Below, in pieces: positions 9,319-14,993 of a DNA stretch of 64,000 bases. Position 1 is the stretch's first letter. Each line of letters begins with the position of its first letter. Both the position numbers and the translations under genes were made by a program. The notes under the pieces are model-generated. The model was given only the letters and a program-made list of their open reading frames with translations. It searched no databases and was not told where the DNA came from. Source of the stretch: Lepidodermella squamata (lineage: Eukaryota > Animalia > Gastrotricha); assembly GCA_047495785.1 (NCBI GenBank), contig JBLDXI010000004.1:310001-374000 (forward strand), written 5' to 3'.

Positions 9319-10306
9319 GTTAGTTATGATATTTGTATTCAGAACTGGGAATATCTAATGCCGGTACCAAATTTCCTTTAATTCAATACCTAACGTTATT
9401 CGTTTTCTAACTGGTTATGGTTATGGCTATGGTTAGGGTTAGAGTTGAAGACTAGGTCTCAATATTGGGGATTTGACTGATTGAACTGAATTCAATGATT
9501 TTTGGTACTGAATTGAATAATTTCACCACCTAACAGATCTTGTGTGCGGTAAACTTTGCTGAAATTCTCATTAGAATCCAATGCGAGCAGAAAAACTGGT
9601 GATAAATTGCTTCATGCGATTATTGCAAAAACTTCACATTTTGGAAAAATAGCAATTTTCAATTTTCAAGTTCTGGGGTTGGATGGCACCATCCTCTTGT
9701 AAAGGCTTTATCGGGTAATTTTTCTGACAGGGAATTAGGTCAATAATCCATAAGTTCGACGTGGAAGCCACAGAAAAGATCTTAATCCCCAAACGCAAGT
9801 CGTTATGGCTTTTTAAACTTTTTGGGAAATCTGTGCCAAATTGGCGAAGCTGCCGATTTCAGCAAGGCGGATCAATTCTTTTTAGAAATCGGTGGTTCGG
9901 ATCCATCTAGGGCCATCGGAAAGTCACTTGAATCCTCTGGCAAGAACAATGAACAGCTCATGGTGGAATATTGAATGGAAAATAGCAATTTCGAAAATGA
10001 AAATTCTTTGCGAAAATCGCATGGAGCATTTTTTCCACCAGTGCTTCTGTATTCAACATAATTTCTTACGTCTGAATTCATTTTTTTGAAACAGGTTTAT
10101 TTACCTGATATTCTAAATATATTCTGAGTATAGCCAAGATGCTCCTTGAATATTCTGTATCTTATCAATACTACAAACTGACAAAAAACACGAATAAAAA
10201 CTTGTACGAATAATACGCCTGCCTTAAGAAAGCTGCACGTTCATGCGCACACGGCGCAGGTTTTATCAAGCCGTTGTTGGCAGCTGTATCTCAGCATTAA
10301 CAAAAA

Positions 10307-11795
10307 ATGCGCCACCTAATAGTTTTGATTATCGCCGAGCTTACGCTAGTATCCGGAGTAGTCGTTGCTCAAGATAACGCGATCGGATGTGGTACTGTGA
10401 GCCCTACTGCATTGGCAAAATCGCGTGGCCCAGGCAGTCAACCAGCAGGAGTGCATGAGTTTCCGTGGCTGGTTTGCTCTGATCTAATAAAAATTCAATT
10501 AAAAACAGGATGTTTGTTTTCCAAGGTTTTCCTTGAGATCAACTACAGCGGCGAAACGTCACCGTCTTACTGCGGAGCTTCCCTCATCTCGAGGCAATGG
10601 CTGATAACAGCTGCCCATTGCGTTTCGAATGACGGCGAGGCTCCAATTTCGTTCGTGCTTCATTGAATTCGCCAGTTCGATAGTCTTGTTTTTGTTTGCT
10701 CAGGATCACAGCCAAGCTAGGCCGCCATAATATCAGTGCTGTTTCAGAAGCTGGTTCTTACGAATCAGATGTATCGCTGCCTCCTTTAATTCATCCACGG
10801 CACAACGGCAGTCAGAATTTCTACGACTTTGATTTCGCTCTTCTACAACTTACGAGCCCAGTTCCTAGATTCTCTCAGCAGATTAAACCGATTTGTTTAC
10901 CCGACGAAAGGACCATGTTTCGAACCAACTCTTTGACCGCAAATTCGATCGACGGATGCGATTCAGCGGTTGCCGTTGGCTGGGGTTACTTTGCCCGCAG
11001 TTTGTTGTTTCACTTTACTCTGAAGGGGCCTGAGCGCTTGCATATATTTCAGCCAGACTGTCTGAGATTCCGAGGAAGCTCGATCTCCAGGTTCGATCTT
11101 ACCGTAACTGCTCGCTGGAATATTCCCGCGGCCGACCTGATCCAGTCACAATCACAGACTCGAAGATGTGTTTAGCCGCCGATGGCAGTGACGTTTGCTA
11201 TGGCGATTCTGGGGGCCCTCTTATGTGCTTGAAATCGAGGCAGATTTACCTGCTTGGCATAATTTCGAATGGCGATGGATTTTGCAGCGGATACATTCCT
11301 GGAATTTACAGCAGGGTCTGTAAGGTTCTCGATTGGATTTTGGACAACATAGATGTACGCAGCCAGACGAGTACTGCGGAGCAGTTTTGCCCCGTGCCTA
11401 TCATACCCGCAGGATTTGTGACGCGGGTGGACCCGGAAACGTCGGAAGATACCGGCGAAGTTCTGAGGCCTGGAACTCCTGTGGCAAGAGGGTCGGCTGT
11501 TGGCGTGAAATGCAACCCTGGTTATGCCTATTCGTCCTCTGTCTCGATTGCTTCGTGTTTTCCTCCATTTCGACCGGCGATAAACGGAAGGTGCAACCCC
11601 TCAAGTAATGAAGTTTGTGGATCCCCTCCCGTGATACAGAACGGCAACGTATCCCCTGGCCTATCAAGCGTCGGAGCTACTCGATCTATTTCATGCAGCC
11701 CGAATTTTGAGCTCCGAGGAAATGCTGCCGTAACGTGCCTTTCCAACTTAGCTTGGTCCCAACCTGGTTCTTGCGTCTCGAGGCAGCGAAGACCT
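10307..11795 (+). CDS. Secreted trypsin-like (S1A) serine protease with two C-terminal sushi/CCP domains
   Basis: Signal peptide; exons 10307-10471, 10526-10650, 10704-10999, 11053-11795 splice in frame. TAAHC, DFDFALL and GDSGGP give the catalytic triad; DVCYGDS indicates Asp in the S1 pocket. CCP motifs CNPGY and CGSPPVIQNG..CSPNFELRG..W..C. Confidence 0.9.
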
Positions 11796-11989
11796 GTAAG
11801 TTATCTGTTTTAATCTAAGATCCAGCAAAGTTAAACTTCCACCTAGAGTGAGAGCCTCAGAACCCTTACCTTTCATCTAAATTTGACTTTTTTTAATTTA
11901 TTTTAGAAGTAGAACTTTCAGGGGTCGGAGGAAACCGTGGTGGATCCGTGAATATGCATCTTTCTATCCAGGAATCTTTTTTCATCTAG

Positions 11990-12865
11990 ATTCGTGAAGT
12001 GTACGAGCAGTTGTGGGATGCAACAGCCGTGGCGAACGACGTGGCGCAGGTGCGGCAACTCGTTGCGGAGATCGACGAATCCACTGGCGGCAGATTCGAC
12101 CCGGACTGGCATAACCCAGAGATGTTTAAATGTGGTGATTGGTTCGTGAGAAATGGCACCCTGCTGCATAGTGTCGCTTGCAATAGGACTCGACCAGACC
12201 AGCGATTGCAAATTGCTCAGCTGGTCTTGGATCGTGGAGCTGATGTGGATTCCAGGGAGGATGATTACCGCAGAACGGCGTTGATGACTGCGGCTTATAG
12301 TGGGCTAGACGAAGTGGTTCGACTTCTGCTGGATCGCGGCGCTGCCATCGAGGCCGAAAATAACGGTGGCTTGACGGCGTTAATGTATGCGGCGAATGAA
12401 GGGCGAGTCGAAGTGGCTCAACTGTTGCTGGATCGCGGCGCTGCAATCGAAGCAAATAATAAAGATGGCTGGACGGCGTTGATAGTAGCGGCTTATAATG
12501 GGCGAGTCGAAGTAGTTCAACTGTTGCTGGATCTCGGCGCGGCTATCGAGGTCGAGGATAAAGATGGCTGGACGGCTTTGATGTATGCGGCTGAGAAAGG
12601 GCAAATAGAAGTAGTCCGGCTGTTGCTGGATCGCGGCGCTGCCATCGAGGCTAAGGATAACCACCTTGGCGATACGGTTCTGATGAGGGCGGCTTGGAGT
12701 GGCCAAGTCGAAGTAGTACGGCTGTTGTTGGATAAAGGTGCGAATAAGGGTGCCAGAAATTCAGTTGGCCAGACAGCTCTCGATTTGGCGATTTGCGGAA
12801 ACAAAACCGCTGCGGCCGATTTGCTAAGGTCGCGAGGAGCCAGTCGAGCAAATTTAGTTTGCTGA
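11990..12865 (+). CDS. Intronless ankyrin-repeat exon (~7 repeats), probably the terminal exon of the protease gene
   Basis: Near-tandem 99-bp repeats LLLDRGAAIEA.DKDGWTALMYAA. Open frame begins right after acceptor TTTTTTCATCTAG (11989) with no ATG at its start. AATAAA at 12874. Confidence 0.85.
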   Translation: MREVYEQLWDATAVANDVAQVRQLVAEIDESTGGRFDPDWHNPEMFKCGDWFVRNGTLLHSVACNRTRPDQRLQIAQLVLDRGADVDSREDDYRRTALMTAAYSGLDEVVRLLLDRGAAIEAENNGGLTALMYAANEGRVEVAQLLLDRGAAIEANNKDGWTALIVAAYNGRVEVVQLLLDLGAAIEVEDKDGWTALMYAAEKGQIEVVRLLLDRGAAIEAKDNHLGDTVLMRAAWSGQVEVVRLLLDKGANKGARNSVGQTALDLAICGNKTAAADLLRSRGASRANLVC

Positions 12866-12992
12866 AAGTTAAAAATAAAACTTTCTGTTTGTCTTATCTG
12901 TGGATCGGCGTCCGATGTAAAATGATATGGCTCATTGGGCCCAATAACGCCCTTATCAGAAGCAAAAGTAGTTATTTTGAGATGAGCGCGCG

Positions 12993-13157
12993 CAGTGTGC
13001 GAAGTAGGATCCGGGAACTGAGGTGTTTTCTGCTTGATTTTAGGACCCGGCCGAAGAAACCAAAGGGTCCCCCCTGTGGTTTTTTCAGCCTTTCTCTGGT
13101 TGGAGTCCCGGAGCTGGGGTGTCGCGACACCCCAGCACCCCTGTACTTCGCACCCTG
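12993..13157. mobile_element. hAT-like MITE; related copies at ~1300, ~5964, ~54900, ~57060 and ~63880
   Basis: CAGTGTGCGAAGTA...TACTTCGCACCCTG with 8-bp TSD AGCGCGCG (12985-12992 / 13158-13165). Confidence 0.8.
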
Positions 13158-14993
13158 AGCGCGCGTGAAAACAACCGTACGAATCATTTAGCAGGGCCCA
13201 ATTATATAGGACAGAACCGTAATAATAGGCATGGCATCTATATTTCGAGCAATAAAATATATTATACCCCTTTGGTCACCCCTTTGGTCGTTAATTGAGT
13301 TCACCGTTCACCGTACTGGCCGATTGAACTGAGATATCAGATCAATATTCATTTCCAGTTCTTTTGATTCACGGCTTGATTCAAGAACCTTGTTCAATCA
13401 ATCATAACCACTCATTGTCTAATTCTTTCGGCACAAATGAATCAAATCAAATCATCACAATCAATAAATCGCAATGAATCGCGAAATCTAATATCGTCAT
13501 AACATCATCTCAGTATCATCATGAGCTACCTTTTGATACTTCCAGCGAACTTGGATGACTTTTTCCCGATTTTCTAGAAATTCCTTCAAGAAAAAACAAA
13601 GTAAAACCACCGACTTCTTGGAGGATTCAATCCTGAACCTTTGCTGAAACCACGTGCGACGCACGCATATGGCACAGTTGAAAGAAGTTCACAGATTGGC
13701 CACGCTTACAATCCAATAAAAATACAAAATACCCCATTGTTAGAGGTATTCGGAAATCGCAGAAAATCCGGAAAAAAATCATCCTAGTTCGCTCCAAGTA
13801 TCAAAAGGTAGCTCTTAATGTGAAGACTTTATGTGAAGACGCCTGAAATCTCCTTCAACTCAACCTTCCTCGAAAAAGTTGTCACGGTTTATTTCCGAAT
13901 GCGAACTTCTTTCCCAATTCTTGACCAGTTCTTCCATTATTAAAGTTTTGAAAAAAATTAACGTGTTCCTCTGGGAGAGATCTGGGAGAGATCTATCAGA
14001 TGGCATTTGGTTCTTTCTGATGCGGAGAAATCGATTGTTGAGATTTTGAATTTCACGTTTTTTGCCCTCCAAGAAATTGTTAAATCAGTCACCATCTGTC
14101 AGCGAATGCGCAGAACAGCGAAAGCGACATAACAGCGAAAGTGACGAAACAGCGAAAAATCCTCCCCAAAATGCTGTGTAATGTGCTATATTAAAATCGC
14201 TGTTATGTCGCAAATTAGATTTTTCGCTGTTTTGTCGCGTTCGCTGTTTCGGGTATTCGCTGTTATGGCGGTCTGCCGCCTTTGACCAGTGTGGAATATA
14301 GAAACTTTCAACTGCCGGGTACACAGTAAAAAAAAATTCGGTGATTACCGAGCTAAAATGGCTACTCGGTGATCACCAATTTACATGTTAATTGATTCCC
14401 GGCAAAACTGAGCGTGCACCTGGTGATTACCGAGTTTTTCGGTGACAACCGAGTTGGTTACAACCGAGTTTTTGACAACCGATCTGACGAAATCGGTTAA
14501 AACCGACCGAAAAATAGGTGATAACCGACTATTAGGTTCATTTTTACCGATTTTCTTCTAGGTTATAACCGACTGCTTCAGCATGCTCAGCGGCAGCGGG
14601 CTTCTTTCTGCAGGCGCTCACCAGTATACTATGGCATAATTAGCTATTGTATGCATAAAAACGTTTCGCGTGGGATCCATTCTTAGTTTATTGATTTAAA
14701 TCTGTGCAGAACTTTTCGTCACCGGAAATATCGAATAATAATATACAGATTCACGCGAAGATTACGAAATTTTGGAGGCATCAATTACTGAGCGGAAATT
14801 ACGAAATTTTCGAGGTATTAATCGATGTTAATATTCAGAAAATCTCAGTGATAATGCGACACATGAAGATTTGAGCAAAACTGTTATATATGAGCACAAA
14901 ATGTAGCAGACACCCGCTGCAAATTATAATTTAGTCGTATACGACATGTTAGCAAAGTTTCAATAACAATACCTCAATCAATAACAGCGATAT

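What the first reader, a model, noticed from the sequence alone, without database searches (positions are those of the whole stretch)
10307..12880. Probable secreted chimera: trypsin protease, two CCP domains, ankyrin repeats
A consensus donor (CCT|GTAAGT, 11795/11796, phase 0) follows the second CCP. The ankyrin frame opens exactly at an acceptor (11989|ATT CGT GAA GTG, phase 0). No AATAAA lies between them and one follows the ankyrin stop. The product has a signal peptide and no obvious TM segment. Ankyrin repeats are normally intracellular (latrotoxins are a known secreted exception), and CCPs normally precede the protease domain, as in C1r/C1s/MASP and factor B.
Basis: partly seen in the sequence, partly recalled or inferred. 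Interest (0 to 1): 0.8.

Follow-up and report, generated by a model that had tools for sequence, protein, structure and literature searches.

The report
Secreted protease–sushi–ankyrin fusion gene
This is most likely one intact five-exon gene for a secreted protein that joins a trypsin-type protease, through two sushi modules, to eight ankyrin repeats (normally an intracellular binding module), and it is one of at least about fifty such genes in this animal's genome.

Summary

**Gene model.** Five exons (10307-10471, 10526-10650, 10704-10999, 11053-11795, 11990-12865) give 734 codons:
- a signal peptide;
- an S1 protease with His57, Asp102, Ser195 and Asp189 present;
- two CCP (sushi) modules;
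- eight ankyrin repeats.

**Evidence for the CCP-to-ankyrin splice (11795|11990, phase 0/0).**
- The donor and acceptor are kept in every paralogue examined, while the intron sequence and length (50 to about 1900 nt) are not.
- The ankyrin exon has no ATG for 43 codons, yet those codons are under purifying selection (dN/dS 0.23).
- At least 49 of 79 ankyrin-exon copies in the genome have trypsin/CCP exons upstream on the same strand.
- A distant relative (P0054, 892 aa, from an ENA metagenome contig) encodes signal peptide, trypsin, sushi and ankyrin in one uninterrupted reading frame.

**Signs of an extracellular ankyrin domain.** It has four conserved cysteines, three conserved N-glycosylation sequons and no transmembrane segment. 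Variability is concentrated on the canonical binding face.

**Likely role.** A secreted "binder plus protease". The function itself is inferred.

**Status.** I found no paper describing this architecture. The scan had already noted the same family on other DNA of this genome (s1-401890).

The parts
10307..10471 (+). Exon 1 (55 codons). ATG at 10307. Predicted signal peptide 10307-10369 (h-region LIVLIIAELTLVSGVVVA, likely cleavage VVA|QD), then a GPGSQPAG..EFPW stretch in place of the canonical IVGG activation N-terminus.
   Evidence: ORF and sequence; Kyte-Doolittle maximum 2.35; start and donor conserved in paralogues; N-terminal motif.
10472..10525 (+). Intron 1 (54 nt, GT..AG, phase 0).
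   Evidence: Paralogue DNA alignment loses similarity inside it and regains it at the acceptor.
10526..10650 (+). Exon 2 (125 nt). Protease segment with TAAHC; His57 codon at 10616-10618.
   Evidence: Pfam Trypsin E=7.5e-08; motif conserved in paralogues; dN/dS 0.23.
10651..10703 (+). Intron 2 (53 nt, GT..AG, phase 2).
   Evidence: Conserved donor and acceptor positions in paralogues.
10704..10999 (+). Exon 3 (296 nt). Protease segment with the DFALL motif; Asp102 codon at 10831-10833.
   Evidence: Pfam Trypsin; motif conserved; dN/dS 0.16.
11000..11052 (+). Intron 3 (53 nt, GT..AG, phase 1).
   Evidence: Frame change between ORFs 10696-11175 and 11166-11813 is resolved only by this intron; positions conserved.
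11053..11795 (+). Exon 4 (743 nt).
- C-terminal half of the protease: Asp189 at 11190-11192, Ser195 in GDSGGP at 11208-11210.
- Divergent CCP1, about 11388-11594.
- Canonical CCP2, 11616-11774.
- Linker SRQRRP, ending at the GTAAGT donor.
   Evidence: Pfam Trypsin 1.2e-15 and Sushi 8.9e-12 with 2 stretches; alignment to chymotrypsin places D189 and S195; dN/dS 0.12 (protease part) and 0.24 (CCP part).
11796..11989 (+). Intron 4 (194 nt, GTAAGT..TAG, phase 0). Stops in all three frames and no polyA signal.
   Evidence: The homologous intron is 50 to about 1900 nt of unrelated sequence in paralogues.
11990..12865 (+). Exon 5 (291 codons plus stop at 12863-12865).
- Ankyrin domain of 8 repeats.
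- Beta-hairpin insertion at residues 42-56 (12113-12157).
- Four conserved Cys: residues 48, 64, about 270 and the C-terminal 291.
- Sequons at residues 55, 65 and 271.
   Evidence: Pfam Ank_2 1.2e-88; AlphaFold2 pLDDT 94; Foldseek to consensus ankyrin proteins and ankyrin-B/G; conservation.
12874..12879 (+). AATAAA polyadenylation signal, 9 nt after the stop codon.

Best explanation
Window 10307-12865 (+) is one intact five-exon gene of 734 codons. It belongs to a family of at least about 50 copies expanded in this lineage.

How it most likely works:
- The product enters the secretory pathway through an N-terminal signal peptide.
- It consists of a trypsin-fold serine protease with an Arg/Lys-type S1 pocket, then two CCP/sushi modules acting as a spacer, then an eight-repeat ankyrin domain spliced on directly (11795 joined to 11990).
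- The ankyrin domain is an extracellular-adapted variant, with probable cap disulfides and N-glycan sites. Its concave face differs between paralogues.
- The ankyrin domain most likely binds a target that differs from copy to copy and so brings the conserved protease to it. In effect the recognition and protease roles of a complement-like or clotting-like system sit in one chain.

Shown: the gene structure, the conserved linkage, purifying selection on every exon, and the existence of the fused architecture as one ORF in another organism.

Inferred: secretion, glycosylation and disulfides, catalytic activity, and the binder-plus-protease function.
For: **Splice and linkage**
- The donor ...RP|GTAAGT and the acceptor TAG|(V/I)REVYEQLW are conserved in 7 of 7 close loci and in the wider family, with unrelated intron sequence between them.
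- Paralogue L031 has a 50-nt CCP-to-ankyrin intron, which is this genome's usual intron size.
- Every family ankyrin exon examined, except one divergent subfamily (L038), begins at that acceptor. None but L041 (Met at residue 4) has an early Met; first Met at residue 44 in the window copy and 52-164 in most others. The first 43 codons nonetheless have dN/dS 0.23.
- 49 of 79 ankyrin N-cap exons have trypsin/CCP upstream on the same strand, and 50 of 68 trypsin/CCP matches have the ankyrin exon downstream.

**Selection**
- All exons are under purifying selection against 15-28 paralogues, with dN/dS 0.12-0.49.

**Outside this genome**
- P0054, a single uninterrupted 892-codon ORF on a eukaryotic metagenome contig, encodes signal peptide, Trypsin, Sushi and ankyrin repeats.
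- Related contigs carry single ORFs of CCP-SRCR-SRCR-ankyrin with no transmembrane segment, downstream of trypsin-sushi ORFs.
- The ankyrin N-cap hairpin, with its Cys residues and N-x-S/T sequon, is shared with those relatives.

**Protein features**
- No hydrophobic segment beyond the signal peptide.
- The catalytic triad and D189 are present.
- Variability is concentrated at the DARPin-type binding positions: dN 0.77 against 0.19, and dN/dS 1.04 against 0.59.
Against: - There is no transcript or protein evidence. The only public run holding the locus is genomic.
- Read-through of the donor would end the protein five codons later, at 11811-11813, so a short protease-CCP isoform is possible.
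- The canonical IVGG activation N-terminus is replaced by GPGS, so classical zymogen activation, and perhaps activity, is in doubt.
- dN/dS at the binding face is not significantly above 1 (95% CI 0.63-1.66). dS is also raised there, so relaxed constraint or gene conversion of the framework could explain the pattern.
- Sequon counts are only modestly above shuffled expectation.
- The signal peptide was judged by hydropathy and the -3/-1 rule, not by a dedicated predictor.
Confidence: 0.78

Rival explanations
1. These are two separate genes. A secreted protease-CCP gene ends at the stop at 11811-11813 after the unspliced GTAAGT, and an independent ankyrin gene has its own promoter or 5' exon.
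For: No RNA evidence links the exons. An in-frame stop follows five codons after the donor. Intron 4 (194 nt) is longer than the other three (53-54 nt).
Against: - The ankyrin frame has no ATG for 43 constrained codons.
- The acceptor lies exactly at the start of homology in all copies.
- The intron is only 50 nt in L031 and 116 nt in L028.
- The linkage is kept in about 50 paralogues.
- A one-ORF fusion exists in P0054.
Confidence: 0.05
2. It is one gene, but the two halves act apart. Either the short intron-retaining isoform is the main product, or the precursor is cut at the RQRR|P motif by a furin-type convertase, releasing a free secreted ankyrin protein and a free protease-CCP.
For: R-Q-R-R immediately precedes the exon junction and is kept in the closest subfamily: the window copy, L015, L018, L019, L020, L036 and L045 keep RQRR, L013 and L017 have the near variants SQRR and RLRR, and L040 has RRRR. 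The read-through stop lies nearby.
Against: The motif is not family-wide: SEQQRP, SAKQRP, ARLP and VIETPS are found elsewhere. It is absent from P0054 and the SRCR-ankyrin relatives. No cleavage or isoform data exist.
Confidence: 0.12
3. It is an offensive secreted protein, a digestive or venom-like toxin, rather than a recognition molecule. The ankyrin part would act on or inside prey or competitor cells, as in latrotoxins or ankyrin effectors of intracellular bacteria.
For: Secreted ankyrin proteins that are known are mostly toxins or effectors (general knowledge; papers listed). Large tandem expansions and fast-evolving surfaces are also typical of toxin families.
Against: There is no latrotoxin-type N-terminal domain or any pore-forming module, only Trypsin, Sushi and Ank in Pfam. 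There are no expression data to place it in a gland. The organism is unidentified.
Confidence: 0.15
4. It is a decaying or non-functional copy, or an assembly artefact that juxtaposes unrelated exons.
For: The window copy lacks the middle CCP exon found in paralogues L013 and L017. Repeats flank the gene.
Against: All five exons are open with GT-AG introns. dN/dS against paralogues is 0.12-0.49. Independent DNA contigs cover the junction region without differences (records 3-5). The loss of the CCP exon keeps the frame.
Confidence: 0.03

Closest known systems
Unannotated metagenome-derived eukaryotic proteins of the P0054 type. P0054 is from ENA ERZ27332993, contig k141_1024265. Neighbours P0160, P0044 and P0159 have downstream CCP-SRCR-SRCR-ankyrin ORFs.
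   Same: - Signal peptide, S1 protease, sushi modules after the protease and a C-terminal ankyrin array, with no transmembrane segment.
- 35% identity over the protease/CCP part and 35% over the ankyrin part.
- The same Cys- and sequon-bearing hairpin in the first ankyrin repeats.
   Different: - P0054 keeps a canonical ...LIGG activation N-terminus and has more sushi modules.
- Its relatives insert SRCR domains, and no SRCR lies next to the family loci in this genome.
- P0054 is intron-less across the fusion.
- None of these proteins carries a name or a published description.
Complement and clotting mosaic serine proteases (C1r, C1s, MASP, factor B/C2, Limulus factor C).
   Same: Secreted S1 protease combined with CCP modules. 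The logic is that a recognition module directs a protease. Like factor B/C2, it lacks a classical free Ile16 N-terminus (general knowledge).
   Different: - The CCPs follow the protease instead of preceding it.
- There are no CUB, EGF, vWA or LCCL modules.
- The recognition part would be an ankyrin array in the same chain, rather than a separate lectin or C1q.
- Sequence similarity is only at the generic S1 level.
Alpha-latrotoxin and related spider toxins.
   Same: Ankyrin repeats working outside the producing cell; a gene family expansion.
   Different: Latrotoxins have a specific N-terminal wing/body region and about 20 repeats. By general knowledge they have no signal peptide and are released by holocrine secretion. 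Here there is a signal peptide, a protease and CCPs, and no latrotoxin-type region.
Consensus-type and designed ankyrin repeat proteins (DARPins; PDB 4o60) and the ankyrin-B/G membrane-binding domains.
   Same: The fold matches: Foldseek E=4e-17, TM 0.87 by target, 41% identity to 4o60. Variability sits at the same positions that are randomised in DARPins (2, 3, 5, 13, 14, plus 10 and 16 here).
   Different: This is a natural domain that is routed to the ER. It has an N-cap beta-hairpin insertion, four conserved Cys and conserved sequons.

Membership tests
S1 (chymotrypsin-fold) serine peptidases, Pfam PF00089 | Significant match to the family profile | tested here: met
   Exon-wise hits above the 20.6-bit cut-off: 32.9, 23.7 and 58.3 bits. 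PDB phmmer gives chymotrypsin at 2.8e-15.
S1 (chymotrypsin-fold) serine peptidases, Pfam PF00089 | Catalytic triad His57, Asp102, Ser195 | tested here: met
   TAAHC (His codon 10616-10618), DFALL (Asp codon 10831-10833) and GDSGGP (Ser codon 11208-11210).
S1 (chymotrypsin-fold) serine peptidases, Pfam PF00089 | Zymogen activation site giving an Ile16-Val-Gly-Gly N-terminus | tested here: not met
   The homologous stretch reads (R)GPGSQPAG..EFPW in the window and its paralogues. The distant relative P0054 keeps LIGG. Membership in the fold family stands, but the classical activation mechanism is doubtful.
S1 (chymotrypsin-fold) serine peptidases, Pfam PF00089 | Proteolytic activity | not testable with these tools
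   Needs a recombinant protein and Arg/Lys substrates.
CCP / Sushi module, Pfam PF00084 | Profile match with four Cys and the conserved Trp | tested here: met
   CCP2 (11616-11774) matches profile positions 1-56 and the protein as a whole scores E=8.9e-12 against Sushi. CCP1 (11388-11594) is a second, weaker stretch with four Cys but no Trp.
Ankyrin repeat domain, Pfam PF12796 / PF00023 | Tandem 33-residue helix-turn-helix repeats forming a solenoid | tested here: met
   Ank_2 E=1.2e-88. The AlphaFold2 model has pLDDT 94 with 8 helix pairs. Foldseek matches ankyrin proteins.
C1r/C1s/MASP-type complement proteases | CUB-EGF-CUB-CCP-CCP-protease order | tested here: not met
   No CUB or EGF hit, and the CCPs are C-terminal to the protease.
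Latrotoxins | Latrotoxin N-terminal region followed by about 20 ankyrin repeats, with no signal peptide | tested here: not met
   The N-terminal part is signal peptide, Trypsin and Sushi, and there are 8 repeats.
Uncharacterised trypsin-sushi-(SRCR)-ankyrin secreted family (P0054 type) | Same domain order in one polypeptide, and a shared Cys/sequon hairpin in the ankyrin N-cap | tested here: met
   The order is shown for P0054 as one ORF. BLASTP of the ankyrin parts gives 4e-34 and aligns KCGD..NGT..ACN with KCCD..NSS..ACS. For the window gene the single polypeptide rests on the inferred splice.
Uncharacterised trypsin-sushi-(SRCR)-ankyrin secreted family (P0054 type) | Expression as one transcript and secretion | not testable with these tools
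   No RNA run holds the locus.

The most novel reading that the evidence does not exclude
The roughly 50 paralogues form a germline-encoded repertoire of natural extracellular ankyrin binders, 'natural DARPins', each wired to its own trypsin-like protease. That would be a previously undescribed type of secreted recognition-effector system for immunity, symbiont management or allorecognition in a small-intron invertebrate. Relatives in at least one other lineage add SRCR domains.
Probability: 0.3. Interest if true: 0.85.

Novelty: new variant of a known kind. Interest (0 to 1): 0.68.

Why it matters
Ankyrin repeats are a standard example of an intracellular binding scaffold, and their extracellular use is known almost only from toxins and from engineered DARPins.

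A large, conserved animal gene family that routes ankyrin arrays through the secretory pathway would be new in two ways. It fuses them to extracellular modules and to a protease. It also equips them with cap cysteines and glycosylation sites.

If so, nature would have used this scaffold outside the cell as a variable recognition module. That would be comparable in logic to leucine-rich-repeat receptors or to MBL-MASP, but in a single chain.

The family also offers natural examples of oxidation-tolerant, glycosylated ankyrin scaffolds, and a set of testable protease-binder pairs.

Tried and rejected
**RNA evidence.** One contig covers 11763-12016 unspliced. The contig 'joints' 11802 to 11993 and 11803 to 12564 have short sides (27-28 nt) and wrong lengths (190 and 760 nt). 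I take them as paralogue or repeat alignments, not splicing.

**Word-based protein searches.**
- The ankyrin N-cap of a long paralogue found nothing.
- Exon 4 found only two weak trypsins.

**ESM Atlas look-ups.** These gave only generic trypsin and ankyrin clusters.

**Literature searches.** None found a paper describing the architecture. A search for the metagenome sample accessions also found nothing relevant.

**Organism identification.**
- COX1 is absent from the assembly, so there was no mitochondrial clue.
- ATP synthase subunit c hits are all nuclear.
- The organism stays unidentified. It is an animal-type genome of 121 Mb with introns of about 53 nt. A sponge is only a guess, based on the SRCR/sushi-rich relatives.

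**Ideas tested and dropped.**
- SRCR modules inside the longer paralogue introns: none found near the family loci.
- A furin site as a family-wide feature: rejected, since it is confined to one subfamily.
- Positive selection on the binding face: not demonstrated. dN/dS is 1.04 with CI 0.63-1.66 on the a-priori positions. The value of 1.20 included position 10, which I added after seeing the alignment.

**Not run.** The complex-prediction tool was not used, because no binding claim between defined partners is made.
Full report
**1. What is there**

The window is part of a 121-Mb eukaryotic assembly (G000:C4:310001-374000) with very short introns.

Reading 10100-13300 and aligning it with four paralogous loci gives a five-exon model on the + strand:
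- E1 10307-10471
- E2 10526-10650
- E3 10704-10999
- E4 11053-11795
- E5 11990-12865, with the stop at 12863-12865

The introns are 54, 53, 53 and 194 nt, all GT-AG. The total is 734 codons.

Pfam, run exon by exon, finds Trypsin in E2, E3 and E4, Sushi twice in E4, and ankyrin repeats in E5 at Ank_2 1.2e-88.

So are the absence of a polyA signal in between and the AATAAA at 12874.

**2. Is the CCP-to-ankyrin join real?**

No transcript data could be obtained. The single public run that holds the locus is a DNA assembly whose contigs cover the intron unspliced. The case therefore rests on comparison, and it is strong.

(a) *Paralogues.* Searching the genome with the ankyrin exon gave at least 197 matches, including eight full-length paralogues at 58-68% identity.
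- Six of those eight carry the trypsin and CCP exons upstream on the same strand within the 6 kb fetched.
- In all seven loci, counting the window, the last CCP ends ...R-R-P|GTAAGT (GTGAGT in one). The ankyrin frame opens at ...TTTAG|(V/I)REVYEQLW.
- The sequence in between is unrelated and ranges from 185 to 1898 nt.

(b) *Wider family.* Using the coordinates, 49 of 79 ankyrin N-cap exons have a trypsin/CCP match upstream on the same strand within 12 kb, mostly within 2.5 kb. Conversely, 50 of 68 trypsin/CCP matches have the ankyrin exon downstream. These are lower bounds.

(c) *No independent start.* Every family ankyrin exon examined, except one divergent subfamily (L038), starts exactly at that acceptor, and none but L041 (Met at residue 4) has an early Met. 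The first Met lies at residue 44 in the window copy and at residues 52-164 in most others. Yet the first 43 codons have a median dN/dS of 0.23. They are therefore translated and need an upstream exon.

(d) *No room for a second gene.* In paralogue L031 the intron between the CCP and ankyrin exons is only 50 nt, and in L028 it is 116 nt. That leaves no space for a second promoter and first exon.

(e) *Outside this genome.* An exhaustive HMMER search with exon 4, followed by Pfam on the full-span hits, found P0054.
- P0054 is an 892-aa protein with a signal peptide, Trypsin (57-301), several Sushi modules and a C-terminal ankyrin array.
- It is encoded as a single uninterrupted ORF (L021:8001-10679) on a 19-kb eukaryotic metagenome contig, next to kinesin and LSD1-like genes.
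- Its closer relatives lie on contigs where a trypsin-sushi ORF is followed, on the same strand, by sushi/SRCR ORFs and then by single ORFs reading CCP-SRCR-SRCR-ankyrin. There is no hydrophobic segment between the extracellular modules and the repeats.
- The ankyrin parts align at 35% identity (E=4e-34). They share the unusual first-repeat insertion, KCGD..NGTLLHSVACN against KCCD..NSSALICAACS.

The fusion is therefore an established architecture and not an accident of this locus.

**3. Is every part functional?**

Against 15-28 paralogues, the window copy gives these median dN/dS values:

| Part | dN/dS |
|---|---|
| E1 | 0.32 |
| E2 | 0.23 |
| E3 | 0.16 |
| Protease part of E4 | 0.12 |
| CCP part of E4 | 0.24 |
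| Ankyrin exon (E5) | 0.49 |

*Protease.*
- The triad is present: TAAHC, DFALL and GDSGGP. Alignment to chymotrypsin puts an Asp at position 189, with Gly216 and Gly226 by inspection (the two glycines are my own reading of the sequence, not a tool result). This predicts Arg/Lys specificity.
- The canonical IVGG N-terminus is replaced by a conserved GPGS(Q/H)P.G motif throughout this genome's family, whereas P0054 keeps LIGG.
- Classical zymogen activation therefore seems unlikely. Activity may depend on a cofactor or substrate, as in factor B/C2. This last point is an analogy from general knowledge and was not tested.

*Other copies.* Two distant paralogues have TAAQC (L042, L043), which may make them pseudo-proteases.

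*This copy.* It has two CCPs where L013 and L017 have three. The middle CCP exon and its flanking introns are missing, and the frame is kept.

**4. The ankyrin domain**

AlphaFold2, run on a 7-paralogue alignment, gives a confident model (pLDDT 94, pTM 0.90). It has eight helix pairs and a beta-hairpin (residues 42-56) inserted in the second repeat. Foldseek's best matches are consensus or designed ankyrin proteins (4o60, 41% identity) and ankyrin-B/G.

Several features point to the secretory pathway:
- Four Cys are conserved in at least 8 of 9 paralogues: two flank the hairpin, one lies in the C-cap, and one is the very last residue.
- Three sequons are conserved in at least 7 of 9. The hairpin sequon is also present in the metagenome relatives.
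- No transmembrane segment exists anywhere after the signal peptide.

Overall sequon counts are only modestly above shuffled expectation (P about 0.02-0.2 per sequence). The argument therefore rests on positional conservation.

**5. Variation between copies**

Folding the alignment onto the 33-residue repeat shows high entropy at positions 2, 3, 5, 10, 13, 14 and 16 and near-invariance elsewhere.

On the positions chosen a priori from DARPin design (2, 3, 5, 13, 14, 33 in five repeats):

| Positions | Pooled dN | dS | dN/dS | Bootstrap 95% CI |
|---|---|---|---|---|
| A-priori binding face | 0.77 | 0.74 | 1.04 | 0.63-1.66 |
| All other repeat positions | 0.19 | 0.33 | 0.59 | 0.44-0.77 |

The binding face is thus the part that differs between copies, but positive selection is not demonstrated. 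The raised dS at these positions suggests that framework homogenisation or saturation contributes.

**6. Mechanism proposed**

- Shown: one gene model; a conserved fusion; constraint on all parts.
- Inferred: the protein is secreted, and the ankyrin array binds a target that differs from copy to copy. The CCPs space it from a conserved trypsin-like protease, which then cleaves the bound target or a downstream substrate.

The RQRR motif just before the junction could be a convertase site that separates the halves. It is confined to one subfamily, so I treat it as a side hypothesis. Whether the system serves immunity, symbiont handling, allorecognition, digestion or offence cannot be decided without expression and binding data.

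**7. Comparison and novelty**

It is a member of the S1, CCP and ankyrin superfamilies. It is not a MASP/C1r-type protease, because there is no CUB or EGF and the CCPs follow the protease. It is not a latrotoxin. Its true relatives are unnamed metagenome proteins of the P0054 type.

I found no paper describing a trypsin-sushi-ankyrin or SRCR-ankyrin secreted protein. The sponge immune-transcriptome papers I read list ankyrin, sushi and SRCR genes separately (PMC6208332, PMC8242945).

The scan had already noted the same family about 1.65 Mb further along this contig (s1-401890). I saw that note before testing the binding-face variation. I re-derived its main points independently on this locus. 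I also added the one-ORF homologue, the 50-nt intron, the genome-wide linkage count and the per-exon selection figures.

**8. Limits**

- All searches and the fold were done exon by exon, by reference.
- The organism is unidentified. The assembly has no COX1.
- No tool here predicts signal peptides, so the call rests on hydropathy and the small-residue -3/-1 rule.

Noticed in passing
window 12990-13165: A roughly 166-bp interspersed repeat starts 125 nt after the gene's stop. At least 40 copies at 90-95% identity are scattered over many contigs (411 first-look candidates). It contains an internal 30-bp palindrome and has no Rfam match. It looks like a young MITE- or SINE-like element. Depth in the DNA run reaches about 18,000 there.
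   Followed up: partly
window 11594-11616, compared with L013 and L017: The window copy has lost the middle CCP exon together with both flanking introns, in frame (CNPSSNEVCG). The closest paralogues have three CCPs in separate exons.
   Followed up: partly
window 10400-10470 and the paralogues in L013-L047: The whole family in this genome replaces the IVGG activation N-terminus of S1 proteases by a conserved GPGS(Q/H)PxG motif. The distant metagenome relative P0054 keeps LIGG.
   Followed up: partly
L042 and L043 (G000:C64:669400-675200 and C85:124800-131000): These family members read TAAQC instead of TAAHC, so the catalytic His is replaced by Gln. They may be pseudo-protease members.
   Followed up: no
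L037 and L038 (G000:C30:134600-140000 and C60:38400-43800): In this divergent subfamily the last CCP and the ankyrin frame are only about 17-32 nt apart and in different frames. The junction does not fit a normal intron, and I could not resolve it.
   Followed up: no
G000:C4:1.92-2.08 Mb, C64:0.29-0.86 Mb, C36:0.53-0.58 Mb, C42:0.20-0.24 Mb: The family sits in several tandem clusters. Ankyrin exons range from 227 to 952 codons, about 6 to 28 repeats. L003 and L005 are nearly identical in their repeats, which suggests recent duplication or gene conversion.
   Followed up: partly
window 9368-9551 and 14152-14335: Further high-depth stretches in the DNA run (about 3,500 and 6,000, against a background of about 50-90). 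These are probably other interspersed repeats flanking the gene.
   Followed up: no
whole assembly G000: No COX1 match anywhere, so the mitochondrial genome seems to be absent from the 151-contig assembly.
   Followed up: no
L022, L024 and L027 (ENA metagenome contigs): Eukaryotic contigs in microbial metagenome assemblies carry trypsin-sushi-SRCR-ankyrin gene strings. The source organism, perhaps a host animal of the sampled microbiome, is unknown.
   Followed up: partly
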